Origin: Phallusia mammillata | Lineage: Eukaryota | Assembly: GCA_965637545.1 (NCBI GenBank) | Contig: OZ281500.1 | Coordinates: 18,538,001 to 18,602,000 of the forward strand | Direction of reading: 5' to 3' | Length of the DNA stretch: 64,000 nucleotides | Part shown: in pieces, positions 223 to 42,936 of the stretch | How positions within the stretch are numbered: the first letter of the stretch is position 1 | Layout: each line of letters opens with the position of its first letter | Made by a program: the position numbers and the translations under genes | Notes under the pieces: model-generated | What the model was told of the DNA's origin: nothing | The model's database searches: none | The model's input: only the letters and a program-made list of their open reading frames with translations

Positions 223-3200
223 ATCGGACGGCACCGAGCACCTATTTAACCTTCGAGGGGTTGGAGAAAGTCCTTTGTCACTGGAGCACATAGAAATATC
301 ATGCAAGTGTCGATCGGTGGTCGAACAGAAAGTGAAAGTGCCCAACTATTCTGCACACAAGCTCACATACAAAATCTTCTCCGATATTCCATTCATTGAG
401 GGACCAAACGAAGTAACAGTGATGAAGGTCAGTAGGAGACTAAAGTAAATTCTATGTTAATTAGTGGTAGATTAAAGCTGGGTGATGTCCATGTGTTCTC
501 TATTTAAATATTTCCTTCATGAAACTGTGTTGTTTTTCGAGTAGCACTTAAATATTACCGAAAGTATTTCGTTTCGTATTTTGTAGTTTTTATAATGCTT
601 ATGTTTTACACATTTTACAAGTATATGGGCTGTATTTTAGTTTTTGACCCATTTAACCAGAACAAAACTCACTTTTGTTAGTTATGACTTCATGCGTAAA
701 TGTGGAAGTGTGTGTGTTTCTTATTTCACACCGATAAATCCAGTTGATGAAAGACAAAAATACTAGTTCATGAACAGTACAAATACGAGAGTGTTTTACT
801 TGTGTCACAATCACAATATTAGATTTTTTGATAAGTAAACTGCAGACAGCTACACTGGTGTGGCTTTATAGGTCAATAGATTGCAATGACTCCATGTCTT
901 TATCTTTACTTAACATGAAAACAAGAAAAAACGCAAAATGTTCAGCTTACCAAAAATAGATTATCTTAACTCTCAGGGCGATTCGACTGAATACACCTTC
1001 ACGTTGTCACCATGGCAACGGGGAACGACACGGGGCGTCCTGGCCTTTGTTGTGGATGACGCGTCGACCAAAGCGGCGCTTGAACGTTACGACAGCGACT
1101 CGGACGCTGAAGACGCGGCGGTGGATTCGATTCCGATTCCGGCGCCTGGAACCGGAGCATCCAAGACCCCGGCTTTCTTGAAACCTAAGCGTCTGACTGA
1201 ACTTGAAGGATTGTCTGGTTACAGGTATATAGCTTGTTTTTATTGTAAATATTTGTTTGTTTGATGCAGAATACTCTAAACCATTGGTCCCTAATTTCAA
1301 GCCTTGGGTCTGACCTCACAGTCATAAAGTAGTATGGGTTTGTCCCGCAGGCCTTTACCACCTTAAGCGATCTTTACACCTGTTGGGCGGTTATGTCACT
1401 TATGTTTGAGCGGTCAAATCACCTATGCCATTGGTGCGTTCTGTTTGTAAGTTTCTATCGCGATAGGGAGAGAGGGCTAGAGCTGGCGGCGGTTTTTGTC
1501 TGACGTTAGTCGGCGTCTGCATTAGTCCGCCCTATAACATGTGTTGTTGCCAGTCCGACGGGTTGTGGAAAGACTTAATTTGTTTCGAGTTTGATAAATG
1601 AGAACTTGGTTACTCCGGCTGCGGCAGAGAACGGCACAAAAAAGGCTTGCGTGAGGTTGCCAAAAAGCCAAAGCGAAAATGTGCAAAGCGAAAAATCATA
1701 ACGCGATGGTTTTCTTGCTGCTATTTTATGTCCGCTACTGGAAACGGTCCCCTTACGTCAAAGTGCCGATACGCTTGTGGAGAGTGCCTTGAGCAATCTG
1801 GACGCTAAAACCAATTCAATTGTCAACAACGCGATGCCGCTGGATGCGAAAGTGTTATACAACGAAACGGTACAGAAATATCGTTTCTACAGCAATGTCC
1901 ACGCAAAAACTTTGGAAGTCACTGTAGTCGGCGCGAAGAAAGACCGGTTTTGTATTGGCACAATATCTCTTAACCTGCTTAAGTGCTTTTTGATCACATG
2001 GTAACCCACAAGTCCAAGTGCCAAATTACTTCCTGCCCTGAAGGGGACACATATTGATTTTACTCAAATTGTTTTTGTTTGTTTTTCTTTCTTTTTTTCT
2101 TCTTTTTTTTTCTTCCCAAAGTTTGTCCGACTCGTTTTTCCATCAAATGTTTGATGGATTTGGCTGAAATTTACACAGATGGTAGATATAGTTATGTAGA
2201 TGTGCATCCCACTTTGTTTTTGTTGATAACCCCAGTATTTACCCCGCTAGCCCCCTAAAATGGTTATTTTCCCCCCAAAGTTTGTCCGACTCGTTTTTCC
2301 ATCAAATGTTTGATGGATTTGGCTGAAATTTACACAGATGGTAGATGTAGTTATGTAGATGTGCATCCCACTTTGTTTTTGTTGATAACCCCAGTATTTA
2401 CCCCGCTAGCCCCCTAAAATGGGTGAGTTTCTAAACAGTGTCAGAATTGGCTGAAATTTGGATTTCTTGTATAGTATGCCATTTATAGGTGTCGATGTTG
2501 TGTTCAACCCTGTAGTCCTAACATTTACCCCACAAGCCCCTAAAGTGTAAAACGTATTTGTATGTTACTGGGCACCACAAACGCAAGATTTCTTTGGTGC
2601 AATAGTGTTACAAAGGCAACCAGTTGTATGTTGCTCGTTGGTGGGTTGCTTGGTGGTCGTTTTATCGGAAAACATCTGTATTGGATTGGTGCCGTCACTT
2701 TACGAAGATAATCAACCTAACACATTAAGACTGTCCCATAGTGCAAAACCAGTCCTGAGTATCGTTCAAGTTTGAACATAAAGTTCCGAAGTTAAGGTCA
2801 AAAAACAGTATTGTTTTAACTTTTATTGCTTACTGTTAGTGTCGTACTGATACTCAGTCACTTTTTTAAGTGTAATTTCTTGTCAACATCACACATTCAT
2901 TGCAACTGTGACGGTTTCAATTTTTCTTGATCGTTTTAGCATGTTATACATGTCCAAAGTAAGTTGTTGATATTCACCACTAAAGTTTTTAAACTTGCGA
3001 TCAATGCCGTTCAACTTAACTTCTGTTAAGAATACCACGTAAACATATAAAGTAGTGATGCAACGAAGTTATTACATATTTCACTTAATCGCATATTTCA
3101 CTTAATCGCATAATTCACTTTAACGCATAATTCACTTAATCGCATCATTCATTTAATACAGGGTGGCCAACCCGTGGCCCGCGGGCCACATTAATCGCTA

Positions 3201-6200
3201 CGTAATTTATGGCGTATTTACATTCCGAGAAATCGGTGTTTATTGGTTGCTTTTTCCTTTTATAATCGAGCAATACACAGCTGTTCAAGTTACTTCTATT
3301 GCATCACAATGCAATTGTTACGCATCACATTTTCCACATTGTTACGTCAACAATCTTATTCGTGCTTCAAGAGTCAGTCAGTAACATATCTTGCTTTGTT
3401 GAGGTACATGTGATATCAGTTATAACGCATTTAGCAGTAAAATTTCTTCTGAAGTCTTCAGTGATATAGATTATGTTAAATAGAAAACGAAAAGGAAGCA
3501 ACGCGAACAGAATATTCCAAGAAAGGTGGACATGTGACTGTTTTTTTGTAGATGTCGATAATAAGCCAACTTGCCTGATATGTAATCAAACAGTATCAGA
3601 ATGCAAAGAATACAACATAAAGAGACATTACGTCAGCAAACATTCATCAACTTATGATAAATATCAGAATGAGTTTAGAAAAGATAAAGTGAAAGAATTA
3701 ACAAAAGTTATTCGTGGACAGCAAATGTTTTTTTCGAAAGTTTCTTTGCAGCAGGAGTCGGTTGTGAAAGCGAGCTACTTGGTGGCAGAAATAATAGCAA
3801 AAAAATCGAAGTCATTTGCAGATGGAGAATTTGTTAAGGAATGCATTGTTCGTGTTGCTGATGTCATATGTCCGGAAAAGAAAGAGACATTTGTCAAAAT
3901 AAGTTTGTCAAGACAGGCCATAACTCGTCGTGTTGAAGAGCTCGGAAATTCTATAGAAGAAACACTAATTGCAAAAGCGCAAAAATTTTCATCGTATTCT
4001 TTGGCGCTTGACGAGAGCACCGATGTCAAGTCTACTGCTCAGTTGGCAATCTTCGTGCGAGGAGTTGATGACGATTTCGAAATTACCGAAGAACTTGCAG
4101 CCATTGTCCCAATGAAAGGCACAACTAGAGGCATAGATTTGTTGGAAACTGTGATGACAACAATCAAGCGCCTTGGTTTATCATTGTCGAAGCTTTCGGG
4201 AATTACAACTGATGGTGCTCCATCAATGGTTGGAAGACAGCAGGGTCTAGCAAACTTACTTAAACTTGAAGCAAGCAAAGTCGGGAATGACACTGTCATG
4301 CAATTCCATTGCATAATACACTGAGAGAACCTTTGTGCCAAGTCATTGAAAATGCAAAATGTCATGTCAGTTGTTACTAAAACGGTAAACTTCATTCGTT
4401 CCAAAGGCCTGCGCCACAGGGAGTTTCAAGAGCTACTACATAGCATGGATGCTGACTTCGATGACATTCCAGACTACACCGAGGTCCGATGGCTGAGTCG
4501 TGGCAAAATGCTGAAACGAGTGTTTGAACTCAAGGATGCAATACAGAGCTTTATGGAAAGCAAAGGAAACAGTGTTGAAGAATTCATGAACGAGCAATGG
4601 ATAGAAGATTTTGCATTTTTGGTGGATATTACTACCCATCTAAACGAACTAAATTCACGTCTACAGAGAAGAGGGCAACTGATACACTCCATGTTCGATC
4701 ATGTCAACACCTTTGCTGTGAAATTAACCCTGTGGGAAGCGCAGATAAACAACAAAAACTTCGTTCATTTTCCTACTCTTCAGAGTCTTCAAGTTCAAAA
4801 CTCCCAGAAATACGCAAAACTAATAACGGAACTAAGGAAAGACTTCGATCACAGGTTCGCTGACTTCAAAAAGTCTGCTATGCATTTCAATGTGTTTTCC
4901 TGCCCCTTTTCTGTAAAGATAGAAGATGTACCTGAAAACCTACAGATGGAGAGCATTGATCTTCACTGCTCATCTGATTTAAGAGAAAAGTTTAAGGACT
5001 TTCCATTGCTAGAATTTTACAAAAAATACGTCTCTAAAGAAAAATATCAGAAGATTCACAAATTGGCTGTATTCGTGACCTCATTTTTCGGCAGCACTTA
5101 CTTGTGCGCGCAAGTTTTTTTGCGGATGAACCATGTCAAATCACCTGTGAGGTCACTAATTTCTGATACCCATATGGAGAACTCGCTTCGTATTGCTACA
5201 TCGTCCATCTCGCCGAATATTGCCAAACTTGTGAGAGAAAAACAGTGCCAAACTTCACATTGAAATGTCGCCGTGTAGCAAAAACTTTGTTGACTTTATT
5301 GTATCTTCGTATCGTTATTGTTCTTATAATTGTAAACAAGGATAATAAACATTTCTGACATTAGAGTTTCGGATTGAGGGTTTTAATTGGACATTATCAG
5401 ATAGCCATTTGTAAGATTACAAATCAGCAACAGTCAAGTGGCCCGCGCAAACTTTCGTAAACCGCATTTGGCCCTTTGGCCAAAAAGGTTGGACACCCTC
5501 GATTTAATAGCATAATTCACTTAATCGCACATTTCACTTAATCGCATATTTCACTTAAACGCATATTTCACTTAATCGCATATTTCACTTCATCGCATGT
5601 TTCACTTAATAGCATAATTCACTTAATAGCATAATTCACTTAATAGCATAATTCACTTAAACGCATATTACACGTAATAGCTTATTTCACTTAATCACAT
5701 AATTCACGTAATCGCATATTTCACTTAATCGCATATTTCACTTAATCGCATAGTTCACTTAATCGCATAATTCACTTAATCGCATAATCTGGCTCTAGGT
5801 CAGTGCTTTTCAACCTGTTCAGTCCCGAAGGTCTAACTATAAAAAATTAAACGCGTCCATCGATCAAGCCAACAAAATTAGAGGATCTTGGAGCATTAAG
5901 ATGCACTTCTAGGCTTGGTAGCCTCGCTTTGGACTGTCTTGTCATCTGCATCAAACAGTTGTATATCTTGGCCATTAGTAACTGCCTGTTAACATTTGCT
6001 TCGTTATTTTCGGCAGTTGTTAGAAAACTTGTTGGAATTTATTACGACTTGTCGTAACTTCTGCTTGGGATCATATCACTCGTACTATTTTCTTGCACAT
6101 TTTCTTTCTTGAAGAGATTGCGTTCATAGAAAACATACAAAAGAAATTAGTTGTCCCTGGTTTTTGATTTTATTAGATCTTTACCGTTTTTTTTTCTTTT

Positions 6201-9200
6201 TTAGGGTCTGGTACTCGCTAGAAGTTCACTCTGATCCGGCCGATCCGATTGGCTCATTGGAAGTCACGTGCCCGGTTCAAAGGGTCAATTACGTGGAAAT
6301 ACCGATCAAGAATCCATCCGGAGAAAACGTGAAGTTTGAGGTAAACAAATTGTAAAAGTTGTAAATATTGTAATTCCTTTTTATCTGCAAAAAAAACGCG
6401 TCCACTTTAAGAATCAGTTTTATATTGCATTTATGAAGGATACACAAACATTTACACGAAACGTTAAAGAATAAGTTTTATCCAATTTAGGTTCAGGTCT
6501 CTGGAAATTCGGTTGAAGGTGACTCAACTCTTTCTCTAGCGCCGCACGTGCCCGCTGTGTACCGTTTCAGTTACAGTCCGTGTGTGGTGGGCGAAGGAAC
6601 AGGGTCTGTAGTGTTTACAAGTGACCTGACTGGAGAATTCTGGTACAAACTCAATCTGAAATGCGTTTCGCCACCGCCAACACATCTCCCCATGATGGAA
6701 TGCCAGCTAGGTAAAATAAAATTATTTGTTAATAAGTTACGAATTGCTGTAATTTTGCAATGTAAAATTTTGGTAAAAATTGTTTGTTTATGCGAGTTGT
6801 GTTTTTTTTTCAAGACAGTTAGACAAGATTTTTAGACTTCATACATATTGAATAGCATTGCGATATTATATGGGTGAATTGCAAAGAATTAAAATGTCGT
6901 TAAAGGTGTTTGTGGTACGTTTGCAATATATTACAATTTATAAAGGCAATAAAATGTGCGGGTTTAGGCAACAAAGCTCTGTGGATTTTTTTCTAAAATC
7001 ATTAGCGTGCCCAATCATTAATGATACTGATATCTGCAAAACTCATTGTTCCGCCTAGCAAGACTAAATTGATACAAAAAAATATTCAGCCATTTCCTAG
7101 TATATTATAGTCATAAACAATTTTTACATACAATCTAGGTTCTTGGTCTCGTCAATACATCAGCATTAGCAATCCAACAGACGAGCCAATGGACGTGGAA
7201 GCATCAGTGTCCAATCCAGTTAACTTCTCACTTGACGTAACCATGACAACTTCAAAACTTCCGGACGGCACTGACCGCGCACCATCGTTCTGCGTCCAGC
7301 CGAGGTCGAAGGTCAATATCCCTGTCCAATTTATGGCCACTTCACTCGGAGCTTCGACCCACCAAGCAACAGGTATACGTGGTTAAATGTGTGTGAAGTT
7401 TTTTGTAAGAAAACTTGAAGTCATTTTATTTGATTTTTGGTAGCAAAGCAGTGATTATTTGACCCCAATTTTGACGTTTTAAAGATACCACACCTCTGGT
7501 GGTACACACCTTTACCTTCAGTTTTTGCCTGTGTTATATGTCTCGATTGTATGTTCCCAACGTTTTGGTGACTTTGAAAGATGAAAATAAATTTTGGTTA
7601 TGGTTAATTTCTTAAACTTCTCTTAAAAAAGTATGGCCTAATTTACTATTATAGCGCATATTTACAACATAAACACTTGAACAACTGAGCGACAGTGTGG
7701 TTTAAGCTTTTATGACTAATAAAAAAAATCTGCATCTTATTATTTTTACTTATTGTAATTATTTTGTTTTAAACTAATTTTTATTCAATACTCCCTGCGA
7801 CAATAATTTTATCCTCCAACGGAAAAATTCATAGACTGATTACCTTTTGACCTTTTCCTAAACATCAGAAGTACTCAAAAATCGAAATCCTCTGAAAAAA
7901 AGACCTAAAGTGACAACAAAAACATAAAATCTTACAGTTACACTGAGGAGCAAGCAACTGGGCGATGCTGCCTATCTTGTTGCTGGACGTGGTGTGGCAC
8001 CGGCGCCCATGGAACCTTTGAGTGTTAGTGCGGCCACAGGTTCCAGCACGTCACTCATTCTCCCATTCCGTAACCCCACTGACGTCACAGTGTATGCAGA
8101 CGTCACACTTTCCGATCATGAGCAGACCATGAACAGCATTGCTCCATCTGTGATAAGGTAACTTAAGTTACAAAGTTTGCGAGAAAGGTCTGACTATTTC
8201 GATGGCTCTATTTGTACTTGCACCTTTTAAACTTTCGTGAAAAAAAATCATGACTTTAATGGTGAAAATAACGGCCCATATAGACGTAAAAAGCGACATG
8301 CTTTATATTTCAAACGTTTCGGCAAATGCTCATGCAATCATCAGTGATCATCAAGCATGTCGCTTTTTACGTCTATATGTGCCGTTATTTTCACCATTAA
8401 ACTTATGAACAGATCCGTAAATAGTCCAAATCATGACTCTTGGATAAAAAGACTGACAAAAGTAAAGGAAATTGGAGTAATTAAGGTGTAAAAAAGCCTT
8501 TTTGTGCATGTGGTGGCATAGTTGTGCAGACGTTACTCGAAATAAACCTAAACTATACTAAAAAATAAGTTTATACGACTTTTTTTCTACCATATCTCGA
8601 TTCCTTCTGCTCTATTCTCCAGGTTAAAAGCCCCTGGTCTATGCTATTTTACATGTAAGTCTACGCCGTCAGTTTTTGTGATTATGGGTGCAAGGAGTTA
8701 ATATGTAGCCCTCAATAAAGAAACTACTAGCACATAAAACTAGTACTTGGAAACGTTCATAATTTACTACGATCATAAACTAAAAAAAATATCAACATAA
8801 AATTACAAAGTTGCAAAAAATAACAAAAACTACCGAAAGGTGAATCTCTAGGCCACTAAAAATCATACAATTTTGAAATATTCTCATGCTAAACCGGAAC
8901 TCTTACAGAAATTGCATCACGGCCGACTCGGCGTTCTGTCTCTTGCTCAAACACACAAACAACATTAAGTTGGCTCCGCTTCAGAGCATTGATATTCCAT
9001 TTACATTTGCTCCTGATACGGTAAGAATCATTAATTCATTTTATATGTCTACACCTCCACGTTCTATTCGCGCTGTTTCTTTTTTCATGTCCTTTGCTGG
9101 TTTTACACTTTAAGAATGACAAAAGGATTGTCGAATTGCCATACTAGCTCGGTTCTATGGCATTTTACGTGCTTTTTGTGGGACCTGTAAGCTTGTTTTC

Positions 9201-12200
9201 GAAGAATTTGTGAAACTTTAAACCGCTTAAAATATTAGTGCACTATTATCTGATCTTAAAATTATTAGAAGGTTAAACTGAAGAAAGTTTTGGTTAATAA
9301 CTTAACATATGGCTCTTGGCAGATGCGTCGCCACGAGGGGGCACTGACGATTTCACTTCGCAAAGAAGACGGTCGACCATGGCCGGGTGAAACCGACGGC
9401 ATTGAAGATTTGTCAGGTTTGCCTCAACGATTGTTACTTTATTGTTGTAAGATACTTGCCTTATCGGGCATGAATATCAAAATATCCAGTGGCAAAAGCG
9501 GTCCCATTTCGCCAATTAAAGACAAAACCAAACCGGTCAGGTATCTATCTTGGATATTTCTACTGAGTCGCACGTCAGGGGGATTTAACTTTTGTGTACT
9601 TAAGTATTGCTCTTCCAAGCAGTTTTTATTTTGAATCGACGACGTTTCGAGCTCTCATACGCGACGCCTTTATCAGGATAATGGCATATCTTGCAAGACA
9701 AATTTCTTGTTTAGCGACAATTTTTGTGTACATTAGGTTGTGTTACCCACTTAATATGTTTGATGAAATTTTCAAGTCATTAGATATTGTAAAGCGAATA
9801 ATTTTATTGCAGGCTTGGGAGGAGCTGAAAAAGACGACATTGGACGCTTGAGGTCGCTTAGCAGATCAGATGATGGTTCAATATCCGCCATCCGCTGGGT
9901 ATTCCCCATCCACGGAATCCCCGAAGTCAGATCGAGAGAAAGCAAAGGTATTTTTTATGAATGGACTTTAAATCAAGTGACTTAACTGCCTGCCATATCT
10001 TTATGTATTTTTCGCACAAAACAGTTTGCAATCAAGTTTGTTATTGTAGAAGCAACACTTCAATGTCAGGCCAGGAGTCGGATTGAAGAGCGTTTGGAGG
10101 TCACTCTCACTGGCGCTGTGCCAAGTTCCGCTTCCGGCCACAACCTGGCACGTTTGAGAGCCGTCACTCCCCTCGACCAACGGAGGTCATCCGGGGTCAG
10201 CGATGGTGTTGCTGTGGAAGGTTTGTGACGATTTGAGACAAATGTTGGGTTTTAACTCCCGTCATTGTAATATTATAAAATGGTCAATTTAATATCAAAA
10301 CGTCGCGACAAATCTATTGTCAAAGTTAGTGTAATATTACATGACAAGTTAAGTTAAAGCGACTTTTGTTTTCCCACCTTTTTTACCAATCCTTTTATGC
10401 GACTGAAGTGTATAATCAATGTATCCTTCGATTACAAATGGTGGTATGAGCATTTGCCCAAACGTCTTAAGTTCTAAACAGAAAGCATGTCGCTTTTACG
10501 TCTTTTTTACAGCTATATTACCTCATAAACATACCCGTGTATAGTGTTCCAAAAAAAGATAAAATTTCTCAAAATCATAAAACCGAAATTGATGGTCAGG
10601 CATGGGTTTTTACCCTGTTACTCCTTGCAAACTGAAATGCCGTTGAATGACTACTCTAGCCAATACGGCCGATCTCTCGTCACCAGCTGCACTGATGAGA
10701 CCTTATAGGTCGAAACAGTGTGCACTGTCTGTAGCTTATCATTTATTGGCTATATGCTTTTACGTGATGATTTTTTACAAGTAACAAAAAATACTCGACT
10801 TCATTTCCTATATACACTCACACGCGAAGCCATGGCAAATAGTTTACGGACATGAAATAATCAGTTCATAAACAAAATCGTTTTTTTAAGGTCACGCTGT
10901 TGCTGACGAATTTTCGTACACCATCGAATATCCGGACGGAGAAGCCAGACAACAATTAGAGCAAGCCTTAGCTGTTCATCTGGTACGAAAAGAGCGAGAC
11001 CCCCACACAGGAATGGTGATACTTCTTTTCAATCTCGTCTTTTCACCGTTTAGAATGCTCAGGTAACTGCTTGTGTATAGGGCAGGGTTGTGGTCTATTC
11101 CGATGAATTATTAGCAAATGACACTTTTTTAATAGTTAAGGCTTTTCGTCCACTTTGATGCAATGTCAAAAAAGTCCTGCTGAAGAAATATGTTATGGTA
11201 ACAAAGCAAATTATATGTGCGAGCTGATCACTCGAAACGGATAAATATAATTAAATAAATAAAACACGGATTGGATTATCCTGATAAAATGGCTTTTGGA
11301 AAAAATACTTCAATGTAACGATGAACATGGCACATGCCACTGTTTAAAGAAGCAATACATATAAAGTAGAGTAAATATGTCTTCTTTGAATCAGGTAAAA
11401 CACACATTTTTACCTAATTATGTATTCGTAGCCACACGGTGAACTTGAAAGTGACGTCAGCCACCGGGGGTATCTGGTGTTTCCCCCTCACCCTGCGTGC
11501 TTCCGAACCACCCCCAGATGACGTCATCACTGTTGAGGCAGCCGGACTTGGAAAAAGTTCAAGTGTCGGTTTTGTGCTGTTCAGTCATTCCAAGTGAGTT
11601 AACACAAATGACCAACCGCGAATGGCACTTGTTTCAAAAACCTGTGTTAAAATGAGGTAATAACTTTGTACGCGTGTATACGACTATCATACATCCTCTT
11701 TTGGTGCAACATATCTATATTTTCAACAAAAACAGGTTATCCTCTGAGGACAATAAAAAGTACCCAAGTGTCCTCCTTTTTTCATTCTTTGGATTACTAA
11801 ACGTACATGCTATTAAAAACAGCCAAAAAATACATCTTTCGCTTATCTTTTTGTACGAAATATGGTTTGATTTGCGACACTGCAAACATATGTTCAGTGT
11901 AAGTTGTGATAATTGTTGATTGAAATCAATTATTTTACAATGCGTTCAACTTCATCCAAACTATTCTATATTAATTGACTGCGAAAATTTGGTTTAATAT
12001 ATTTTTCTTTTATTATCTTCGGGCCCCGAAGATAGCTTATGATGTTGTTGTTTTTTGATGGGAATATGATAGGCCTGCGCGTGCAAAAAGACTTAAGAAT
12101 GATAGGTTTTATATAAACTCAAAACTTAATGCACAGACATGCGACTCCATTCAACGCATTCTTTGTATCTGGGAGCGACCCAGAACTGACAGTGTTTCCA

Positions 12201-32012: not shown

Positions 32013-35000
32013 TCACGCATCGGCGACTTCTGGATTTTGGTCGTCTTCATTTTGGGGTTGGTCCTCTTCTGCCACTGGTTGCTGCAAATGTTTGCAAAAA
32101 TGAAAGTTTTTTTTTGATAAAGCTTTGCTGCTTTTAAAAAAAAATACATCAGTGTTTAAAGTAAAAAACTTATTGAAATTGGAACATTTTCATGCAAATT
32201 TTCATGCATAGTCAAATATTATATAAATGATATCTATAAATTACGTGATCTACATACATCCGAGCTCTTTAAAAGCTTTGATCATGATCGAGTTATAATG
32301 TACGACATGAAATGTTATACTTATTTTTGGCAAAAATGGATTAACTGCCAAAACCGTCGTCTTGTCAGGATTTGTAGAATTAACTTTAGTTTTTAAATAT
32401 CGCGATGTCAGATAAACACATTCTGTGGTTGGTCGATGCGCGTCACGTGATCTACCTGCTCCGGTGCGTCATCACCATCTTCCACTTCCCGCAAATCCTC
32501 TGCATCGTCGACATAATCTGCTCCAGCACCATCCTCCGGACTTTCTTCCACTCTTGCTCCGTTGCTCTCAGTGTTGTATCCTTCGTCGTCGAACACGATT
32601 TCTTCTGGATCCGGAGCACGAGGGAGGAATTCGTCGTCGGGACAAATTCTCTCGAATAATTCTCTCGCCTGGAAAGGTCAATGCGTTACATGCGACAACA
32701 GCAACTAGGACTAGTAACGTTTCGACTTTTTTAAACTGACAATATGGTGGTACAGGCTCATGAGAGTGTCCGATGTAATTTTATCGTGATAATGCCATTG
32801 ACTTCATCATTTTTCATTGCCTACTAAATACAGCCATTTATCTTGATCATGGTGAGGAGTGAGATGTAATTACCAATAAATTTTATTTTTTAACGATTGA
32901 ATTATAGTGAAACCTGCTGGAATCGTCTAGTAAATTAAATCTCAAGGCTATATAAGATGAAGATGGACATACATTCATAAATGTGGTCATCCCTGAAGCG
33001 TTCATGCAGGCCAGCGACCACAGCCCACTAAAATTATAAATAGCACGCCAGGCCGAATAAAGACGTTGGACCGAATGAACCTGGTGCAATTCGCCCATGC
33101 GTACTAAGATTTATTGAAACTTTGGATTTCATTTCAAAACTCGCCTCTTCCATAGTTTTGTCGAATCCCAATTCCATTCCTGGGCCGCGCGCTACATACA
33201 AGTTGCTAGGTAACGCATCACGTGTCACACCGTCTTCCATCATGTCGAAGTAGGAAGACCAAAGAATGTGAGGTTTGGCGTCGTCAGTCGACTCTGCGTC
33301 GCCACCCTGTGGAACTTATGCACAAAATAACGTTTGCATTATCAAGGTCTGTAATCAAGTTGTGCTAATAGAACAAAATAAAAAAAATCGTACAAAGTCA
33401 ATAAATACACAATAAATCTAGTATTTTTACCTTCAGCATCTGCATGTCCTGCAAAAAGTATCTGCTCCACCTCTTTGAACTTCTCTCTCGGATTACAAAC
33501 CTGGTTATCATTGTTTGGGGCTGATGACAGCAAAGCGTGAACCAGATCTGCGAATTAAAAACGTGAATTGGTCAAATATAGTTTAAGCATCCTTTAATAT
33601 TCGAATAATCTGTTACTCACGATATTTGGAAGGACAAACGCAGCATTGTGGACCTGCCTCGATAACACGAACAGAACCTCTGCTGCCATCTGGAGGAAGT
33701 GTGATCAGCGAAACCTGTTCAAATACAACGTAAGATCCTTATTCTAAAATCAAACAGGGAAAGGATGGTGTCAGGGACCATGTCTTTTCGAGTTTGTATA
33801 TTTATGAAATCCAAACAGTCAATATTTTTTGTGTTTCTGTAAAATACTTACGTGCTCTTTGTCCGAAGCAAGAACAGACTTGTCTGTGACGTAGACCGCA
33901 CGTGACACGCTGCTGGCAAATTCACAACGATACGAGTCGGGAACGTTGCTCTCATCCACTATCAAGTGTTTGCATTTGATCTTCTGACCTGTCAAAAAAT
34001 AAAAATGCAAGAATCTACCGTGTCTTAGCCTAGGTAAACAATGCAAACATCATGATTTAGTTTAGTGTGTTATGCACTTTTCCTCTTACCTTGTGAATCA
34101 ATGATTGCTGTGCATTTTCCACTTTCTGTGTTCAAGACAAGGCCCACAGCATTTCGTCGCAAGCAGAAAGTTCCTCCAAAAACAGCACTTAACCTTGGAT
34201 CAAACAACGCAAAGAAATAAAAAACTTGTCCAATAACAAGTTAAACTCGAAAATGCTTTGTCCAAGAATAGGGCACAGATATCATTCTTGAAGGTGATGA
34301 AACTTTTTTTAAATTTTAAAATCTATTAGTCCACAGTACAAGGATAAAAAACAGGATACTTTGTACCATGTAGTTAACTTGTCTCAGATTATATCAACAA
34401 TGAATTCAAGCTAAGATATACAGCTAACCTGGAAAATGCCTGAGGCAATTCACCAACACCATACATAGGCCACAGAAATGCACTGTTGCCATAGCGACCA
34501 AGGCTCTGAAGAAACTTCTTAGTAGCTTTTAACCCTTCAATAGTGGTGCTTGTCTCTTTAACCATGGCAATTGAATGCAGAATAAATTGTTGAGCTTTCT
34601 CGCTGAGCCTCTTGGAACAAAGAAACTCAAGAAAAAGTCTGTCTTCAAACTCTACACACAAAAAAAGCATTTAAACTTGATGTAAAGCATAAGAATTATA
34701 GCCTAATATATAAGGAAATGTATGACCAAAAATGGCTACCTTGCCATATGGGTATGTTTGGGAGACCAGCTGATTCAGTATGATGCCTTTAATAGGTCTG
34801 GTGTACTACGATTCAAAAAAAGCTACATAAGAAAGTCAATAATACCTTCATACTCTTCAGGGTGGGCTTCATAATTTGCACATAGTGTGAGAACGCGCAT
34901 AAGAATCCTTTTTTCAATGACAGTTACAAACCTACAAAAAACAAATATCTGTCAACACCCAATTAATTATCCTTTAACATAAAATCATAAATTTTTACTT

Positions 35001-36511
35001 GCTGCTAAAAACATCTGCTCTGGAGCAAGGAACAGGTTGCAGATGGTCTTGGCCTGATAACAGTGTAAGAGTTCTTGAAACATTGCGAAACTCCAAATAT
35101 CTCGAAACATTGGATTGTATAAGCAACTCCACCAGTTTTCCACGAGAAAACATAACCTGATAAACAGGACAGTTCATTGCTTTGTCAACTGCTGGTTTAA
35201 TTATGTGCCTGTGTAGTTTCATCTAATTTTATCCAATTTGTCTGTGTAGTTGTTGAACCAAGTATTGCCTACATGCCGACAAAGAAAGATGCTATTCCCA
35301 ATTAATTATAAAGGAAAAAAACTTTTGTTTAATTTAATGTCTAATTTGCGTATCTGGCCACCATTTCAAGTTGACATGTATCTTACCTTAGGTGCAAGGT
35401 CAACGTTAAACCTTCTCCATTGGTCATAAAATTCATCAAATGATGGAAATTTGTAAGTTTGTTTTACTTCATCCTTCATAGCCACAGGAGATGGGGGTTC
35501 TTCTGTTTTAGTTTCTGCATCATTATCGCCTACATTTTCCCCACAACTTTTATTGTCATCCTCTGTGACTTCAGCAACAGGCAAAGATTCATTTGTTTCT
35601 ATTGTTTCAGCATTAGGCTTTGGAGCAGAATTATCAGGGATTTTAGTTGGTAAACTTTGGTCTTCTTGACTACCAGTGGTGTCATCATTATCAGATGTGG
35701 GCTTTGGTGAAGGAACTTGATTTTGCTCTACATCTTTAGGTGATGCTGTTGTTACTTTATTTTTCCTAGATGCAACAAACAATCAAATACAAATCCCAAT
35801 TTTTTCACAAAATTAAAATATTTCTTAAAAAATGTAAACTTGATGATTCTGGACATTACAATTGCATGGGTAAAAATGTTAACAGAATGAGAATTCAACA
35901 AGTACATTTACCTCAAGTTACAGATAAGGGAACCTTCTTTAATAAGCTGCCTTTGACTAGAAACAGGAATAAAAGTTTCATCCTCAGTAACTAAAGCTAC
36001 TGGATCAAATTCTGACAAATAAAATCCAATAAAAATTTTAATGCACTTTAGACTTTAGTATTTATAAATTCTGTATATTTACCTTTTCTATTTATTTCCA
36101 CAATTCCTCCAGAAGCAATAAACTCATCAAAATCTTTTATGTTAAAAGAAGCCCAGTTGCCTCCATAAAATTTGTTTTGGTCAATGTGCAAAACAGACTT
36201 TCCGATTCTGGAAAAAGCTCCTGACAGAACAGACTCTGTTAAACCTGGACGAAAAACAGTCAGATTAGAAAATTTCAAGTTGACCAAAATAGATAATCTA
36301 ATGTGTAACAATTGGTGTGATGCTAGCACAACTGTCTCAGGTTAGACCAGCAAAAAATTTAAGGTAAGTTTGCAGCTGAAAACATAATGTGGTGTGCAAA
36401 AGTTGGTGTATTGCAAAAACTAATGACAGTTTAAACAACGCTTAGACGGTAAAAATACATACCAGTTCCAATCAAAATAATGTCAAACTCTTCAGGCAAG
36501 GGCTCCTCCAT
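32013..36511 (-). CDS. CHM: Rab proteins geranylgeranyltransferase component A (Rab escort protein 1, choroideremia), ~686 aa
   Basis: Exons 36463-36511, 36083-36244, 35912-36011, 35387-35765, 34999-35156, 34846-34931, 34429-34651, 34090-34193, 33852-33988, 33621-33714, 33431-33547, 33145-33314, 32456-32668, 32013-32081. Motifs [91 protein letters not shown]; acidic insert typical of REP rather than GDI. Confidence 0.92.
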
Positions 36512-36889: not shown

Positions 36890-39800
36890 ATGGCAGAAAA
36901 GGAAAAGAAATACGACAGACAATTGCGTCTCTGGGGAGACCACGGACAACGTGATTTGGAAAATGCAAGTGTTTGTCTTATTAACGTCACTGCAACGGGC
37001 ACAGAAACTTTGAAAAACCTTATACTACCAGGTAAAGTAAATTTGATTTGTTAGCATTTTTACATTTTGTTGTTGAACATATTTGTGCACTACAACGTTT
37101 TTTTTGGACAGGATTAGTGAGAAACAAAATATGATCAGTGGTGGAATTCAAATTTTTTGTCAGGCAGTTCTGTCACAAACGTCATCTTTTTCAGCCGGTT
37201 CTGTTACAAAAAGTCATATTTCCATTGACAGTACCCAGTAATGCTAACCTGCTCACTGATCTTATAAAATTTCATGAGACAGTTCTCTTGAACTGGTGCG
37301 AACCGGCTGAATCCCACCACTGGATATAACCTAAAAATAATTAAATTTGTGGCAATATGGCAAATGCTAATCGTTCGTAAGAGCATAAAATGGCTTGTTT
37401 GGTTTGTGCTGCATTATTTTCTAATTAAAATGTACACAAGGAATTGGAAATTTTACCATTGTGGATGGTGGCAGAATTTCTGGTCAAGATGCTGGCAACA
37501 ATTTTTTTCTTGATCCTGAAAAAATTGGCGAATACAAATCTAAGGTAGATAAAGTAATTTTTATGGTCTGAAACAAATGTATATACTTGTACACAGTGGC
37601 GTATCCAAGGGGGGGTTTTGGGGGTCCGGACCCCCCCCCCCTTTTCAAAAAGTTGTGCGTAAATTAAATAGGCCAAAATCGTTCCGTTTACCACTGCGTG
37701 ATAACAGGGAGTCGTTATCTCAAAGACGTGAGCCTTCAATCTCTTGTATTCGCTTGTTATCTAATCGTCAATTGTGACGTAACAAGGGTTTAATAAGGAG
37801 GTTTATGCGCTAACAATCGGAAAGTTACGTTCCGGCTAGGACGCTGATACCAGTTTCTTGCTAAATGGTAACTGCACTAAGTGCAACATATCAAACTGTT
37901 TTTGCATTTGAACAATGTAAAAGTGTTAAAAACGTGTAATGTTGTGTTGCTTTGATCCGCCAAACACGTAATAGTTTGTCAAAAACATTAGATCGATGTA
38001 AATCGAGTTATGTTATTAGGGTAATTTGTTACTTGCCAGGCACAAACCAGGCACAAAAAAAAAGGATTACCGCTTCAGCAAGAGATTTAGTTCTTTAGAA
38101 ATTGGACCCTGTTTTTTTAAGCAACGATTTTGATTACCTGACAGTCACGCTTATTTTGCAGTTGCAGTTTGGCTGAGTAAGCTAGATAGCAGCGGCGAAA
38201 TCAGAAAACTACAAAGCTTTCGCTAAAATTACCTGTTCTTCCTGTCAATTAGATGGGTAGAGAAACCGCCAATTTTGGAAAAAGTGCTTTGCCGCATAAT
38301 GCGTCGTTTTGAACGACGTGTGACATCATAATGACATCATTGGGGATTTCCCCCAAAAAAATTGTTGGACCCCCCCCCTTTAAAAATTTCTGGATACGCC
38401 CCTGCTTGTACATCGTTTAATCACTTTTTAAACAACAAATCATTTTTTTTTGCCATAATTTTGGGATCTAATGATGATTTGCGAGTTATTGTTTCATCAA
38501 TTTGTCATGCACATAGAGTGTATCTGTATACACCATATACTTTTTTAAAACATAAATAAAATTGGCTGCAAATTTCAAATCGTTTACGGCCAGTAAATAA
38601 TGGCTGCTTACAGCTGTTGTTCGTGTTTGCAGTTTCGTGGGCTCAGCAAGGGTGGTGCTAAATACTGCATGGTATATCGACAAGAATATTGCATTATGTG
38701 TAAAATGTGAGAATACAAGCCCCAACAAGGGTAAAATTACACCAGATTTTAGTGTTATTTCCATTACAAATAGTCACCTGACACGAATATCTCTAACTGT
38801 CAGTGGTTCAAAAATCTGGAAAACTATAGTTTTTGCAAAAGCATATCCATGTCCTTTAAAACTGCCTACCTTGTGATAGCATGCAATAACATGTAATATC
38901 ATGTAGTCACATACAGTATTTAGTACTAGCGGCAATTTTCTTTCCAAATTAAAGTTTAACCCTGCTACTTATAAAACCTCCAAACATATTTTCTGCATTA
39001 GGTGGCAATGGAACTCCTCCAAGAACTGAATCCCGATGTTAAAGGAGAATATGTTGAAGAAGATGTCTCTCAGTTACTGGAGCGGACCCCACAGTTCTTC
39101 ACTGGGTTTTCAGTTGTTATTTCAGGATCCCTTACACTGACAGTCCTGAAAAAACTGGCAGCTTTACTCTGGCCGCACAAAGTTCCTCTTGTTGTTTGTT
39201 TATCATATGGATTCCTAGGTATAAAAGAGTTGATGTATCGTTTCAATTGTAACTGTCTTGTATTGTTTTTGTTACCACTTACAATGTAAACTAGAAGATT
39301 TATTATGGGTTTCCTTCTTGAAAGGGGGTAATTAGTTTTAAACATTATTGTTTACATCAGTTTTTTTAAATGTTTTGGTCAAGTAAGTGTTGTTAAATCA
39401 CATTTAATCATACATATCATAATAAATAGGTATCTGAAGTTATGCATGTTCTTTGAACCTTCCCCCTTGATTAGTTAATTAACAGACTTGAAATGTAAAT
39501 GTTCCTGTTACGTAATGGTGTTGCTTCTGGTTTGATAAACTGTTTCTGATATTTTATAATGAATAGTATGTGCTTTTTTAAACAGGTTACATTCGAATTG
39601 CTGTCGAAGAACATGCTGTGATTGAGTCTCATCCTGACAATGCACATGAAGATTTGCGTTTGGATGATCCCATAGAAGACTTTGTAAAGTTTTGTGACTC
39701 CATAGATTTAGAATCATTAGACAAAAAGGACCATTCCCACACACCTTACTTGATCATTTTGTTCAAGTATTTGCAAACTTGGAAAAATGACCACAATGGC

Positions 39801-41724
39801 CAAGTACCAAATACTTGGAAGGAGAAAAAACAATTCAAAGCTGCAATCCTTGCAGGTGTTAGAAAAAATGCAGAAGGAGTTCCTGAAGATGAAGAAAATT
39901 ATGATGAAGCTGCAAAGCATGTCAACACAGCTTTTGTACCCAATAAGATTCCTCCAGAGTTAAAAGCCATACTTGATGACCATAAATGCTTAAACATTAC
40001 AGATTCTAGCAGTAACTTTTGGATTTTGGCCAACGGTCTTAGGCAATTTGTGCAAAATGAAGGCAGTGGCTTTTTACCCTTGCGCGGTTCCCTTCCAGAT
40101 ATGACATCAGACTCTGAGCGCTATGTAAAGTTGCAAAACATATACCAGGCAAAAGCTGCACATGACATGCAGATTGTTTCCAACTATGTTTCGCATGCCT
40201 GCTCCAGCTTGGGCTGTGGAAATGGTCGGGTATCAGAAAGAGACCTCAAGAGATTCTGTAGAAATGCCCATTTTCTGAGAGTTCTAAGGTAAGCACTATA
40301 GATTAGTGCCAGGATTTGGCCTATTCCCAATTCTGTCATGTTTTTTTTTTCATTTTTGTATCCTAGCCCTGGTTATGTAGTGGTGGCACTCAACTTTGTG
40401 TGTTACCACGTAATAACACAGTTTTAATGAAAGAAAAACACTTAATATGAAAACAATACGCTTTGGGCTATTTGGATTGAGGTGGGTGTTTGTAATTAAA
40501 ATAACAGTCTCAGATACCCTGGCCAATCCTTTATTAACACATGTGGTATCATGCAGTGTTTAGTACCACCCGTTATATAATTTCCAACAAAGATAAAAGC
40601 ATGAATAAAATTTCATGCATGTATGCAAAACAAAAACTCTAGAAAAACTGTTATATATGTTTGTCAACTTTTGCATTCGCAGAACCAGGTCCTTAGAGGA
40701 AGAATACAAGCAGCCATCAAAGGCAGTCATCGATGAATTCACATCAGATAGCAATTCTGATGCACTGTGGTATGTTCTGTGGAGAGCTGTTGAAATGTTT
40801 TACACAACACATGGGAAGTATCCCGGTATAGAAGACGAAGAGTTGGAAATGGATGTCAGCAGAATGAAGGTAGCAATCAGAATAAAAAATAGCATTTTTG
40901 TGTGTGCGAAACAAAGATTAACTAACACACAAATAAACTTCGTTAATGACTTATCCTAGTGGTTCACAACCAGGGGGGAATTCCCCACTAAGTGGGAATT
41001 TTGTAATTTGTAGGGGGGAATTTGTGTCACAATATTAATCTCTTACTGGTTGTCTTTGCTATGGGTTATTGCTGCATTTGCCATATATGAGCTGAGAAAA
41101 AGTTTGTAGGGGGGATAAGATTTAAATATCGACTAAAAGGGTGCAGAGGACAAATAAGGTTGGAAACCACTGACTTATTCAACTTGCATAGCATATTTTC
41201 ATCATACTTTGTAACAAATGATAGGCTTTGAGAATCACAATGTTGGGTAGTTTAACCAAATATGCCATTAACTTGATTTATCTGTACTGCAGGATGAAAT
41301 AACATCTGAAATTTGTAAAAGTTTAAGTAAGGCAGTTATTTTGCCCTTTAAAGTACATGTGTTGCACAACACATTTTAATGACTGTGACACTCAAATAAA
41401 GGTTTGTACCTTGGCGTTCAGAATATTTGGAACTGTGCATTGTGAACATAACGAAGTTTATATTTTTTTATCACTTATTTTCAGTCCTTTGTCAAAGACC
41501 TGATGAAGTCGTGGGGAATCCCAGGTGCCATAGAAGCCGTATCAGACGATTCGTTGCAGGAAATTTGCCGATGCGGTGCCGCCGAAATTCATTCAGTGGC
41601 TGCCTACATGGGTGGGGTGGCAGCCCAGGAATGCATTAAACTGATTACTGGCCAATATGTACCGGTATCTGGAGCTTATATCTACAATGGCCTGAAGTCA
41701 ACGTCCTTGACCCTAGCTGTGTGA
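36890..41724 (+). CDS. NAE1: NEDD8-activating enzyme E1 regulatory subunit (APP-BP1), 530 aa
   Basis: Exons 36890-37031, 37441-37544, 39002-39218, 39586-40288, 40683-40869, 41485-41724 (1593 nt). Motifs [69 protein letters not shown]. Confidence 0.96.
37136..37322. mobile_element. hAT MITE family B, copy 1 (187 bp)
   Basis: CAGTGGTGGAATTC ... GAATCCCACCACTG; highly similar to 49243-49422; TSD decayed (5/8). Confidence 0.8.
37594..38404. mobile_element. Non-autonomous hAT element (811 bp) in NAE1 intron 2
   Basis: CAGTGGCGTATCCA ... TGGATACGCCCCTG; perfect TSD CTTGTACA; G/C homopolymer subterminal tracts. Confidence 0.88.
40957..41172. mobile_element. Charlie-type hAT MITE (216 bp)
   Basis: TAGTGGTTCACAACC ... 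GGTTGGAAACCACTG; TSD ACTTATCC/ACTTATTC (7/8). Confidence 0.75.
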
Positions 41725-42707: not shown

Positions 42708-42936
42708 GGGTAGAGCTACTAAGTACTAACACTGAGCTTCACCTTTGGCCCGACCTGGGAACTTCTGGTAGGTAGCGCAAAAGAGCATAGGCGTTTATGG
42801 TGCTGTTACAGCAATTTGGGTTTATGGTAAGAATAATTGCTGAGTCAGCACCCAAAACGCCTATGCTCTTTTGCGCCACCTACCAGAAGTTCCCAGGTCG
42901 GGCCAAAGGTGAAGCTCAGTGTTAGTAGCTCTACCC
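42708..42936. mobile_element. 229-bp foldback element / long-TIR MITE
   Basis: Arms ~42708-42816 and ~42835-42936 are near-perfect reverse complements (one 7-nt insertion, a few mismatches); 18-nt loop; flanks ATCAAAGC / ATCAAGC. Confidence 0.8.

What the first reader, a model, noticed from the sequence alone, without database searches (positions are those of the whole stretch)
10657..10752. Apparently intact extended type I hammerhead ribozyme in sense orientation inside a CFAP47 intron
Seen: every conserved core base is present (CUGAUGA, G10.1-C11.1, GAAA, GUC). Stem II is 4 bp with a UUAUA loop; stem I is 7 bp and continues through two internal loops into a perfect 9-bp helix. Helix III (ACAGUG-UG-CACUGU) is self-complementary with tandem G-U wobbles, so it could also pair between two molecules. 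Predicted cut after C10729, 161 nt upstream of the 3' splice site of intron 10221-10890, on the transcribed strand. Known: this architecture matches natural fast-cleaving type I hammerheads of retrozymes and Penelope-like elements; conserved intronic hammerheads exist in amniotes. Inference: either a mobile retrozyme copy or a domesticated element that cuts a ciliary/sperm gene pre-mRNA co-transcriptionally, influencing splicing or transcript level. I cannot tell from one sequence whether it has been described.
Basis: partly seen in the sequence, partly recalled or inferred. Interest (0 to 1): 0.88.

Follow-up and report, generated by a model that had tools for sequence, protein, structure and literature searches.

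The report
Hammerhead ribozyme retroelement copy in intron
The self-cutting RNA motif in this CFAP47 intron is real and intact, but it is one of several thousand copies of a hammerhead-carrying mobile element in this animal's genome, so it is an ordinary transposon insertion and not a gene-specific regulatory device.

Summary
A complete type I hammerhead lies at 10685-10736 (+), with its cut predicted after C10729. It sits in sense orientation inside the spliced intron 10221-10890 of a CFAP47 orthologue. A structural descriptor found it once in the window and never in 51 Mb of shuffled sequence. Rfam Hammerhead_1 scores it only 20.8 bits, below the gathering score of 34.

When DNA contigs of the same organism were laid on the locus, flanking depth was about 90. 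Summed depth over the ribozyme was about 1.13 million, and 4,422 contigs were laid at 80-100% identity. That means thousands of copies, roughly 10^4. The repeated stretch runs from about 10594 to about 10770.

Across the copies the catalytic core hardly varies. The changes that do occur fall at tolerated positions, apart from a G12A change at a CpG in about 10% of depth. Other copies occur head to head and in tandem, as known for Penelope-like elements and non-LTR retrozymes.

RNA contigs containing the motif come from other copies. None covers the unique intron sequence, and no cleavage ends were seen. The CFAP47 exons are spliced correctly.

Other windows of this genome carry many hammerhead notes. 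One that was followed up reached the same conclusion. Verdict: a new member of a known kind, of low interest.

The parts
10594..10770 (+). Approximate extent of the repeated element, a solo copy. The right border lies somewhere between 10763 and 10792. No convincing target-site duplication was found.
   Evidence: Summed DNA contig depth relative to about 90 in the flanks: 20x at 10558-10604, 287x at 10605-10651, 8,800x at 10652-10698, 12,500x at 10699-10745, 900x at 10746-10792 and 1x from 10793 on. The longest homologous contig pieces span 10594-10763. The only flanking direct repeat is a 7-mer, TTTTTAC.
10657..10665 (+). 5' arm of the perfect 9-bp inverted repeat that closes the ribozyme domain.
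   Evidence: Sequence and folds. It lies inside the repeated stretch, so it is not an element terminus.
10685..10691 (+). Helix I, 5' strand.
   Evidence: Pairs with 10730-10736, 7 bp, checked by script.
10692..10698 (+). Catalytic core CUGAUGA (positions 3-9).
   Evidence: Among thousands of copies only position 7 (10696, the free N7 position) varies.
10699..10711 (+). Helix II, 4 bp with G10.1-C11.1, and loop UUAUA.
   Evidence: Family variants are 10701 C>U, which keeps a U.G pair, and 10705 in the loop.
10712..10715 (+). Core GAAA (G12 A13 A14 A15.1).
   Evidence: G12 (10712) is A in about 10% of family depth, at a CpG. This copy keeps G.
10715..10728 (+). Helix III: a 5-bp hairpin with a GUGC loop, or a 14-nt quasi-palindrome able to pair between two molecules.
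10727..10729 (+). Cleavage triplet GUC. The predicted scission is between 10729 and 10730.
   Evidence: Sequence and the Rfam alignment. Cleavage itself was not shown.
10730..10736 (+). Helix I, 3' strand. This copy has U at 10732 (a G.U pair), where 97% of family depth has C (a G-C pair).
10744..10752 (+). 3' arm of the 9-bp inverted repeat.
10221..10890 (+). Host intron of the CFAP47 orthologue (GT...AG).
   Evidence: RNA contig X14 record 15 joins 10075-10217 to 10888-11062, with a 3-nt ambiguity (aag) at the junction. Splice dinucleotides were checked. Exon peptides match CFAP47.
838..891 (+). Decayed relative of the same ribozyme in an upstream CFAP47 intron. CUGAUGA has become CUGGUGU and GAAA has become AAUA. 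It is preceded by an inverted copy of the 3' part of the ribozyme.
   Evidence: blastn at 74% over 47 nt, E 0.001; sequence; alignment.

Best explanation
This is a solo insertion of a very abundant, non-coding, hammerhead-bearing retroelement. It belongs to the animal type I hammerhead elements described as non-LTR retrozymes or non-autonomous derivatives of Penelope-like elements. The insertion lies in sense orientation in an intron of the CFAP47 orthologue.

In the element's life cycle the hammerhead cuts multimeric or read-through transcripts into unit RNAs with 5'-OH and 2',3'-cyclic phosphate ends. A host RNA ligase can circularise these, and a Penelope-type reverse transcriptase can copy them back into DNA. 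This mechanism is taken from the literature and was not shown here.

The copy at this locus keeps every catalytic base and all three helices. It can probably still cut the CFAP47 pre-mRNA after C10729 while the intron is being transcribed. That would be a by-product of the insertion with at most a small effect, since the exons are joined correctly. It has no dedicated function for the gene.

Shown: motif integrity, more than chance, multi-copy family, constraint on the core across copies, head-to-head and tandem arrangements elsewhere, gene identity, strand and splicing. Inferred: retrotransposition mechanism, activity of this copy, neutrality for the host.
For: - Complete core and helices.
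- Descriptor hits: 1 in the window against 0 in up to 51 Mb of shuffles.
- In DNA run X1, 4,422 contigs were laid on the locus. Of these, 344 were at 99% or more, 1,064 at 95-99%, 1,637 at 90-95% and 1,377 below 90%.
- Summed depth reached about 1.13 million over 10699-10745, against about 90 in single-copy flanks.
- Hundreds of loose ends run into unrelated AT-rich flanks, which means many different loci.
- Variation among copies inside the ribozyme is limited to five positions: N7 (10696), a wobble-compatible helix II position (10701), loop II (10705), the G.U/G-C position of helix I (10732), and G12A at a CpG in about 10% of depth. The 5' flank 10624-10678 has about 20 variable positions.
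- With the family-majority C at 10732 the hammerhead is the minimum-energy fold.
- Other copies lie head to head in RNA contigs (X11 records 11 and 12, X15 record 28). Tandem 'goes back' joints appear in DNA contigs.
- These arrangements are described for Penelope-like elements and retrozymes (PMC4209133, PMC7229834, bioRxiv 10.64898/2026.07.22.740005).
- A decayed second copy lies in another intron of the same gene.
- The element's GC content is 45%, below 50% as reported for animal retrozymes (PMC7229834).
- Exon-exon junction contig.
Against: - Rfam Hammerhead_1 is below gathering, 20.8 against 34 bits.
- No target-site duplication or tail was found at this locus.
- No reverse transcriptase partner was examined.
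- No circular or unit-length RNA junction was seen among the RNA-run joints listed.
- The copy number comes from summed assembler word depth, which the tool itself warns is not a copy number.
- Helix III (5 bp) is longer than the 1-2 bp typical of canonical metazoan and Penelope hammerheads (PMC4209133).
- The apparent unit, about 110-175 nt, is at or below the published 170-400 nt range.
- For this copy the hammerhead fold is 0.7-1.4 kcal/mol above an alternative fold, so its activity is uncertain.
Confidence: 0.85

Rival explanations
1. Domesticated intronic ribozyme. The copy has been co-opted to cut the CFAP47 pre-mRNA co-transcriptionally and so tune splicing or transcript level in ciliated or sperm cells.
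For: - Sense orientation in a spliced intron of a ciliary gene.
- All catalytic positions and all CpGs are intact, while 10% of family depth carries G12A.
- The insertion is held by DNA runs of at least four samples.
Against: - Thousands of similar copies exist.
- This copy differs from the family majority only by neutral-looking changes, about 10 in 140 nt.
- No RNA contig covers the unique intron sequence, and no molecule ends pile up at 10729/10730.
- The mRNA is spliced normally.
- Only one organism holds the sequence in the run index, so no conservation can be shown.
Confidence: 0.04
2. Inert relic. The motif descends from the family, but this copy does not cleave in vivo because it misfolds or lacks the loop-loop contacts needed at cellular Mg2+. 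It is then just repeat DNA.
For: - The minimum-energy fold of this copy is an alternative pairing of 10689-10694 with 10716-10721.
- The C-to-U change at 10732 weakens helix I by 2 kcal/mol relative to the family majority.
- Many metazoan type I and Penelope hammerheads cleave poorly as monomers (PMC4209133).
Against: - The energy gap is small, at most 1.4 kcal/mol.
- Co-transcriptional folding favours local helices II and III.
- Helix III is a stable 5-bp hairpin, unlike dimer-dependent motifs.
- Invertebrate retrozyme hammerheads cleave efficiently (PMC7229834).
Confidence: 0.3
3. The family is moved as DNA, as a fold-back or MITE-like element, and the hammerhead is a passenger or serves RNA processing unrelated to retrotransposition.
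For: - Many 'opposite strands' joints and head-to-head pairs among copies.
- A 9-bp inverted repeat brackets the ribozyme, with TA on either side.
- An unrelated fold-back repeat lies in the same intron and at 8248-8408.
Against: - Homology with other copies extends beyond the 9-bp repeat on both sides, so it is not a terminus.
- Copy borders are heterogeneous, as with 5'-truncated retro-copies.
- Head-to-head pairs are the known Penelope insertion pattern (own knowledge of the Penelope literature, not found in the papers read here: the term 'inverted' has 0 occurrences in PMC4209133).
- The strong constraint on the ribozyme core among copies argues that RNA function is needed for spread.
Confidence: 0.06
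4. Chance resemblance to a hammerhead.
For: Rfam score below gathering, with a window-wide E-value of 2.5.
Against: - No descriptor hits in 51 Mb of shuffles.
- Thousands of copies with a conserved core.
- The identical 25-nt core occurs in covarying phage hammerheads.
Confidence: 0.005

Closest known systems
Animal non-LTR retrozymes with type I hammerheads (Cervera and de la Pena 2020, PMC7229834)
   Same: - Type I hammerhead with a 4-bp helix II.
- Non-coding, GC below 50%, thousands of copies per invertebrate genome.
- Tandem copies exist.
- RNAs containing the motif are abundant in transcriptomes.
   Different: - This locus is a solo copy with one ribozyme, so it cannot release a unit or circular RNA.
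- The shared stretch, about 110-175 nt, is at or below the published 170-400 nt range.
- Circular RNA was not shown here.
Hammerheads of Penelope-like element flanking repeats (Cervera and de la Pena 2014, PMC4209133; Li et al. 2026 preprint 10.64898/2026.07.22.740005)
   Same: - Massive genome-wide occurrence.
- Palindromic helix III that allows dimers.
- Head-to-head and head-to-tail arrangements of copies.
- Retrozymes are proposed to be non-autonomous Penelope derivatives.
   Different: - Penelope minimal hammerheads have a helix III of 0-2 bp and depend on dimers, whereas this one has a stable 5-bp helix III and a 7-bp helix I.
- No reverse transcriptase or GIY-YIG ORF lies next to it, since the intron is only 670 nt.
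[quoted passage not shown]
   Same: Type I hammerhead in sense orientation in an intron of a protein-coding gene.
   Different: Those are single-copy and conserved at orthologous positions across species. This one is one of thousands of copies, and no orthologous conservation could be shown.
Schistosome Sm-alpha and newt satellite hammerheads (the basis of Rfam Hammerhead_1, RF00163)
   Same: - Same core, a 4-bp helix II and a loop ending in AUA (alignment).
- Carried on short, highly repeated elements.
   Different: - Helix II and loop sequence differ.
- Helix III is longer here.
- The score against the Rfam model is only 20.8 bits.

Membership tests
Hammerhead ribozyme, type I | Conserved core: C3 U4 G5 A6 N7 G8 A9, G12 A13 A14, and the A15.1-U16.1 pair followed by H17 as the cleavage triplet. 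| tested here: met
   CUGAUGA at 10692-10698, GAAA at 10712-10715, GUC at 10727-10729.
Hammerhead ribozyme, type I | Three helices around the core, with G10.1-C11.1 opening helix II. Helix I is open-ended, and helices II and III are closed by loops. | tested here: met
   Helix I 7 bp, helix II 4 bp, helix III 5 bp, checked pair by pair. The descriptor finds it once in the window and never in the shuffles.
Hammerhead ribozyme, type I | Score at or above the Rfam Hammerhead_1 gathering threshold. | tested here: not met
   20.8 bits against 34. Clear-cut phage hammerheads with the same core also fail the gathering score, so this threshold is conservative.
Hammerhead ribozyme, type I | Self-cleavage giving 2',3'-cyclic phosphate and 5'-OH ends. 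| not testable with these tools
   Only assembled contigs were available. No pile-up of molecule ends was seen at 10729/10730 (table 6).
Hammerhead ribozyme, type I | Tertiary contact between loop II and the internal loop of helix I (the canonical fast-cleaving form). | not testable with these tools
   Loop II is UUAUA, and an internal loop follows the 7-bp helix I. The contacts cannot be verified from sequence.
Animal non-LTR retrozyme | Multi-copy, non-coding repeat carrying a type I hammerhead, with GC below 50%. | tested here: met
   About 10^4-fold summed depth and 4,422 contigs. GC is 45%. No ORF lies in the 670-nt intron.
Animal non-LTR retrozyme | Tandem repeats of 150-450 bp delimited by hammerheads. 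| tested here: inconclusive
   This locus is a solo copy. Elsewhere in the genome, DNA contigs show 'goes back' joints implying units of about 108-127 nt (tables 5 and 5c), but the unit length could not be fixed.
Animal non-LTR retrozyme | Expression as linear and circular unit-length RNA. | tested here: inconclusive
   RNA contigs of three studies hold the motif at a summed depth far above the CFAP47 exons, 3,568 against about 6.6 in X14. They are embedded in longer contigs, and no circular junction was listed for the RNA runs.
Animal non-LTR retrozyme | Target-site duplications. | tested here: inconclusive
   Only a 7-mer (TTTTTAC, 10607 and 10772) is repeated in the flanks, and it conflicts with homology starting at 10594.
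Penelope-like element (autonomous) | ORF with reverse transcriptase and GIY-YIG endonuclease between hammerhead-bearing flanking repeats. | tested here: not met
   The intron is 670 nt and has no ORF. The repeated stretch is only about 175 nt.
Penelope-like element (autonomous) | Minimal hammerhead with helix III of 0-2 bp that works only as a dimer. | tested here: not met
   Helix III is 5 bp with a 4-nt loop, although it is palindromic and dimer-capable.
Domesticated conserved intronic hammerhead (amniote HH9/HH10 type) | Single or few copies, conserved at the orthologous intron across species. | tested here: not met
   Thousands of copies. Only one organism holds the sequence in the run index, so orthologous conservation could not be examined.

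The most novel reading that the evidence does not exclude
The family could be an unusually small retrozyme, with a unit of about 110-130 nt. That is below the published 170-400 nt range, at roughly 10^4 copies per genome. Its sense-oriented intronic copies, this one included, would then cut many pre-mRNAs. In an organism that other notes of this scan describe as using spliced-leader trans-splicing, such cuts could be tolerated or even exploited, with downstream fragments rescued by trans-splicing. A second strand: the exact 25-nt core (helix II plus loop) is shared with hammerheads of marine phage-like contigs, which might reflect a preferred fast-folding module or an old transfer.
Probability: 0.07. 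Interest if true: 0.6.

Novelty: new member of a known kind. Interest (0 to 1): 0.2.

Why it matters
As a single locus it matters little. Hammerhead-bearing retroelements in invertebrate introns are known, and this copy shows no sign of co-option.

It is useful as a clean, apparently intact, sense-oriented intronic copy in an expressed gene. That makes it a natural test case for whether co-transcriptional ribozyme cleavage inside an intron is tolerated by splicing.

It also documents that this genome carries a very large hammerhead family whose core is under visible constraint. Annotators should mask such copies as repeats and not call them gene-specific ribozymes.

Tried and rejected
- The Rfam gathering scan of the window found nothing. 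The permissive scan gave only the sub-threshold Hammerhead_1 hit.
- An exact or 3-mismatch search, a repeat search and blastn inside the window found no second intact copy, only a decayed relic at 838-891.
- A metagenome scan with the 25-nt core was meant to fetch further copies of the animal family. It returned only phage-like hammerheads, so no sequences of other family members could be aligned and no covariation count on the family was possible.
- ESM Atlas look-ups of two exon peptides were uninformative. Pfam on exon peptides gave only a weak ASH hit. Gene identity came from PDB sequences instead.
- The target-site duplication search was negative.
- I considered that the 9-bp inverted repeat with flanking TA marks a tiny MITE. 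I rejected this because homology with other copies runs through it.
- I considered that RNA contigs ending at 10729-10731 show cleavage. I rejected this because assembler contigs break wherever repeat copies diverge, and table 6 lists no end pile-ups.
- The organism is coded and was not identified.
Full report
**1. What is in the sequence**

- CUGAUGA lies at 10692-10698.
- Helix II is a 4-bp stem (10699-10702 with 10708-10711) that opens with the G10.1-C11.1 pair. It is capped by UUAUA.
- GAAA lies at 10712-10715.
- Helix III runs from the A15.1-U16.1 pair (10715/10728) for 5 bp around a GUGC loop.
- The triplet GUC ends at C10729.
- Helix I is 7 bp (10685-10691 with 10730-10736) and includes one G.U pair (10689/10732).
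- A perfect 9-bp inverted repeat (10657-10665 / 10744-10752) brackets the whole domain.

All pairs were checked by script.

The 14 nt of helix III are self-complementary if G.U is allowed. Two molecules are predicted to join through a 14-bp helix III.

Between helix I and the 9-bp helix lie 18 nt on one side and 7 nt on the other. The constrained fold puts a small side hairpin there.

**2. Is it more than chance?**

Rfam does not call it at its curated threshold. With permissive settings Hammerhead_1 aligns end to end at 20.8 bits against a gathering score of 34. The E-value is 0.016 for 401 nt and 2.5 for the whole window across all families.

That score alone would not exclude chance in a whole genome. 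I therefore wrote a structural descriptor requiring the core, G10.1-C11.1, A15.1-U16.1, H17 and the three helices.
- It finds this site once in the window.
- It finds nothing in 400 dinucleotide-preserving shuffles, 51 Mb counting both strands, even with helices relaxed to 4/3/3 bp.
- A descriptor that also admits minimal, dimer-type hammerheads gives the same single site and nothing in 200 shuffles.

**3. Host gene, strand and splicing**

The exon peptide from 6548-6715 matches Chlamydomonas FAP47 (E 2e-11) and CFAP47 (E 7e-9). The peptides from 938-1200 and 10890-11051 match CFAP47 weakly but in colinear order, at residues about 2463, 2601 and 2952.

The intron has GT at 10221 and AG at 10889-10890 on the + strand. 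An RNA contig from run X14 joins 10075-10217 directly to 10888-11062.

So the gene is a CFAP47 orthologue on the + strand. The intron is real and is removed, and the ribozyme is in sense orientation 161 nt upstream of the acceptor.

**4. Copy number: the decisive result**

Two run searches showed that RNA runs of several studies hold 3-4 of the 7 sampled words of 10645-10765. Their share of the 52 sampled words of 10400-10900 (0.06-0.08) likewise comes to 3-4 words. So they hold the ribozyme stretch and essentially nothing else of the intron.

I then laid one DNA-type run and three RNA runs on 9900-11300 at 80% likeness.
- In run X1 the word depth is a flat 90-93 over exons and unique intron.
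- Summed depth rises to about 26,000 at 10605-10651.
- It reaches about 800,000 at 10652-10698 and about 1,134,000 at 10699-10745.
- It falls to about 81,000 at 10746-10792 and returns to 93 beyond that.
- 4,422 contigs were laid: 344 at 99% or more, 1,064 at 95-99%, 1,637 at 90-95% and 1,377 below 90%.
- Hundreds of loose ends run into unrelated AT-rich sequence.

Summed assembler depth is not an exact copy number. The ratio of about 12,500 and the number of distinct contigs both still mean thousands of loci. The repeated stretch at this locus is about 10594 to about 10770.

**5. What the copies say about function**

Inside the 52-nt ribozyme, only five positions show an alternative letter at 10% or more in any run.
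- 10696 is position 7, the one free core position.
- 10701 C>U keeps a U.G pair in helix II.
- 10705 lies in loop II.
- 10732 is C in 97% of family depth, making the helix I pair G-C where this copy has G.U.
- 10712 G>A is G12A, which is inactivating. It accounts for about 10% of depth and sits at a CpG, as do the variable flank sites 10667 and 10678.

The 5' flank 10624-10678 has about 20 such variable positions.

The pattern fits a family whose source copies need a working ribozyme, with inserted copies decaying neutrally afterwards, partly by CpG loss. This copy keeps all its CpGs. It differs from the family majority at about 10 of 140 positions, and at only one inside the ribozyme.

With the majority C at 10732 the hammerhead is the minimum-energy fold at -17.9 kcal/mol. 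With this copy's U, an alternative pairing is 0.7-1.4 kcal/mol better. Activity of this particular copy is therefore plausible but not certain.

**6. Arrangement of other copies**

RNA contigs from two independent studies carry two copies head to head, 38 nt apart (X11 record 12, X15 record 28). Another contig has them 12 nt apart (X11 record 11). DNA contigs show many 'opposite strands' joints. They also show 'goes back' joints that imply head-to-tail units of roughly 108-127 nt.

Head-to-tail partial copies are the arrangement described for Penelope-like elements (PMC4209133). Head-to-head copies I know of only from my own recollection of the Penelope literature, since the papers read here do not mention them. 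Animal type I hammerheads are reported to sit in non-LTR retrozymes present in thousands of copies (PMC7229834). These are now argued to be non-autonomous derivatives of Penelope-like elements (bioRxiv 10.64898/2026.07.22.740005).

In the window itself a decayed relative lies at 838-891 in another CFAP47 intron. It is preceded by an inverted copy of the ribozyme's 3' part.

**7. RNA evidence at this locus**

None of the three RNA runs covers the unique intron sequence. Depth there is 0 outside the repeat. The contigs that hold the motif differ from this copy or run into unlike flanks, so they come from other loci.

Several contigs end at 10729-10731. Assembler contigs break wherever repeat copies diverge, and the table of molecule ends lists nothing. 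No cleavage is shown. No circular junction was listed for the RNA runs.

**8. Mechanism**

The most likely account has three steps.
- The family spreads through RNA.
- The hammerhead trims multimeric or read-through transcripts to unit RNAs with 5'-OH and 2',3'-cyclic phosphate ends.
- A tRNA-type ligase can circularise these, and a Penelope-type reverse transcriptase copies them (mechanism from PMC7229834 and PMC4209133, not shown here).

At this locus a solo copy is transcribed as part of the CFAP47 pre-mRNA. If it folds, it cuts the intron after C10729. Since the exons are correctly joined, any effect is small.

From my own knowledge, ribozyme cuts within introns can be tolerated through co-transcriptional splicing and exon tethering (Dye et al. 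2006). Very fast ribozymes can abort processing (Fong et al. 2009).

**9. Comparison and novelty**

It works like, and most probably belongs to, the animal non-LTR retrozyme / Penelope-derived hammerhead elements.

It differs from canonical metazoan type I motifs in having a stable 5-bp helix III where they have 1-2 bp. The shared unit also appears short. It is not of the amniote conserved-intronic type.

Other first-stage notes report many hammerhead elements in this genome. One follow-up on another locus reached the same Penelope-type conclusion. Those are leads only. The copy number and the head-to-head arrangement were tested independently here.

Verdict: a real, intact ribozyme that is an ordinary mobile-element copy, and a new member of a known kind.

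**10. Side result**

A metagenome scan with the 25-nt core returned 20 loci that are not from the animal. All are complete type I hammerheads with the identical helix II and loop. They carry at least eight different, perfectly complementary helices III and several different helices I.

They lie between ORFs of phage-like contigs, which encode a terminase, exonucleases and a phage GroEL. One contig also carries three Pistol ribozymes. This shows that this exact core is used by bona fide hammerheads elsewhere.

Noticed in passing
L001-L020 (e.g. L002:3181-3205, L004:7674-7698, L006:5726-5750): Marine metagenome contigs with phage genes (terminase, exonucleases, GroEL) carry intergenic type I hammerheads. 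Their 25-nt core, including helix II and loop UUAUA, is identical to the animal element's. Helices I and III differ and covary. None reaches the Rfam gathering score.
   Followed up: partly
L004:9452-9531, 9909-9954, 10513-10577: Three Pistol ribozymes above Rfam gathering (40.6-54.4 bits) lie within about 3 kb of the hammerhead on the same phage-like contig, forming a ribozyme-rich intergenic region.
   Followed up: no
window 838-891 (+): Decayed relative of the same hammerhead (CUGAUGA to CUGGUGU, GAAA to AAUA) in an upstream CFAP47 intron. It is preceded by CTGCAGACAG, an inverted copy of the ribozyme's 3' part.
   Followed up: partly
window 8248-8408 and 10420-10540: Fold-back (MITE-like) repeat with 59-nt arms, 93% complementary. 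A related half copy lies about 150 nt upstream of the hammerhead in the same intron. It shows about 6x single-copy depth in DNA contigs.
   Followed up: partly
window 3473-5263 (+): Two adjacent ORFs (283 and 305 aa) with a Spin-doc-type zinc finger and DUF4371, i.e. a hAT/ZBED-like transposase remnant, within the CFAP47 region.
   Followed up: no
window 42724-42927: A 93-nt-arm inverted repeat (94% complementary, 18-nt spacer). It scores 46 bits against Rfam MIR842, below gathering, and is probably a hairpin-forming repeat and not a microRNA gene.
   Followed up: no
window 5453-5843 and 3017-3203: Tandem arrays with a 17-nt period, about 20 copies.
   Followed up: no
window 55146-56282 (-): A 378-aa ORF with an ALS2CR8 (CARF) domain (Pfam E 2e-18). 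Neighbouring genes include NAE1-like exons (39002-40959 +) and Rab escort/GDI-like exons (34389-36329 -), named by eye from their translations.
   Followed up: no
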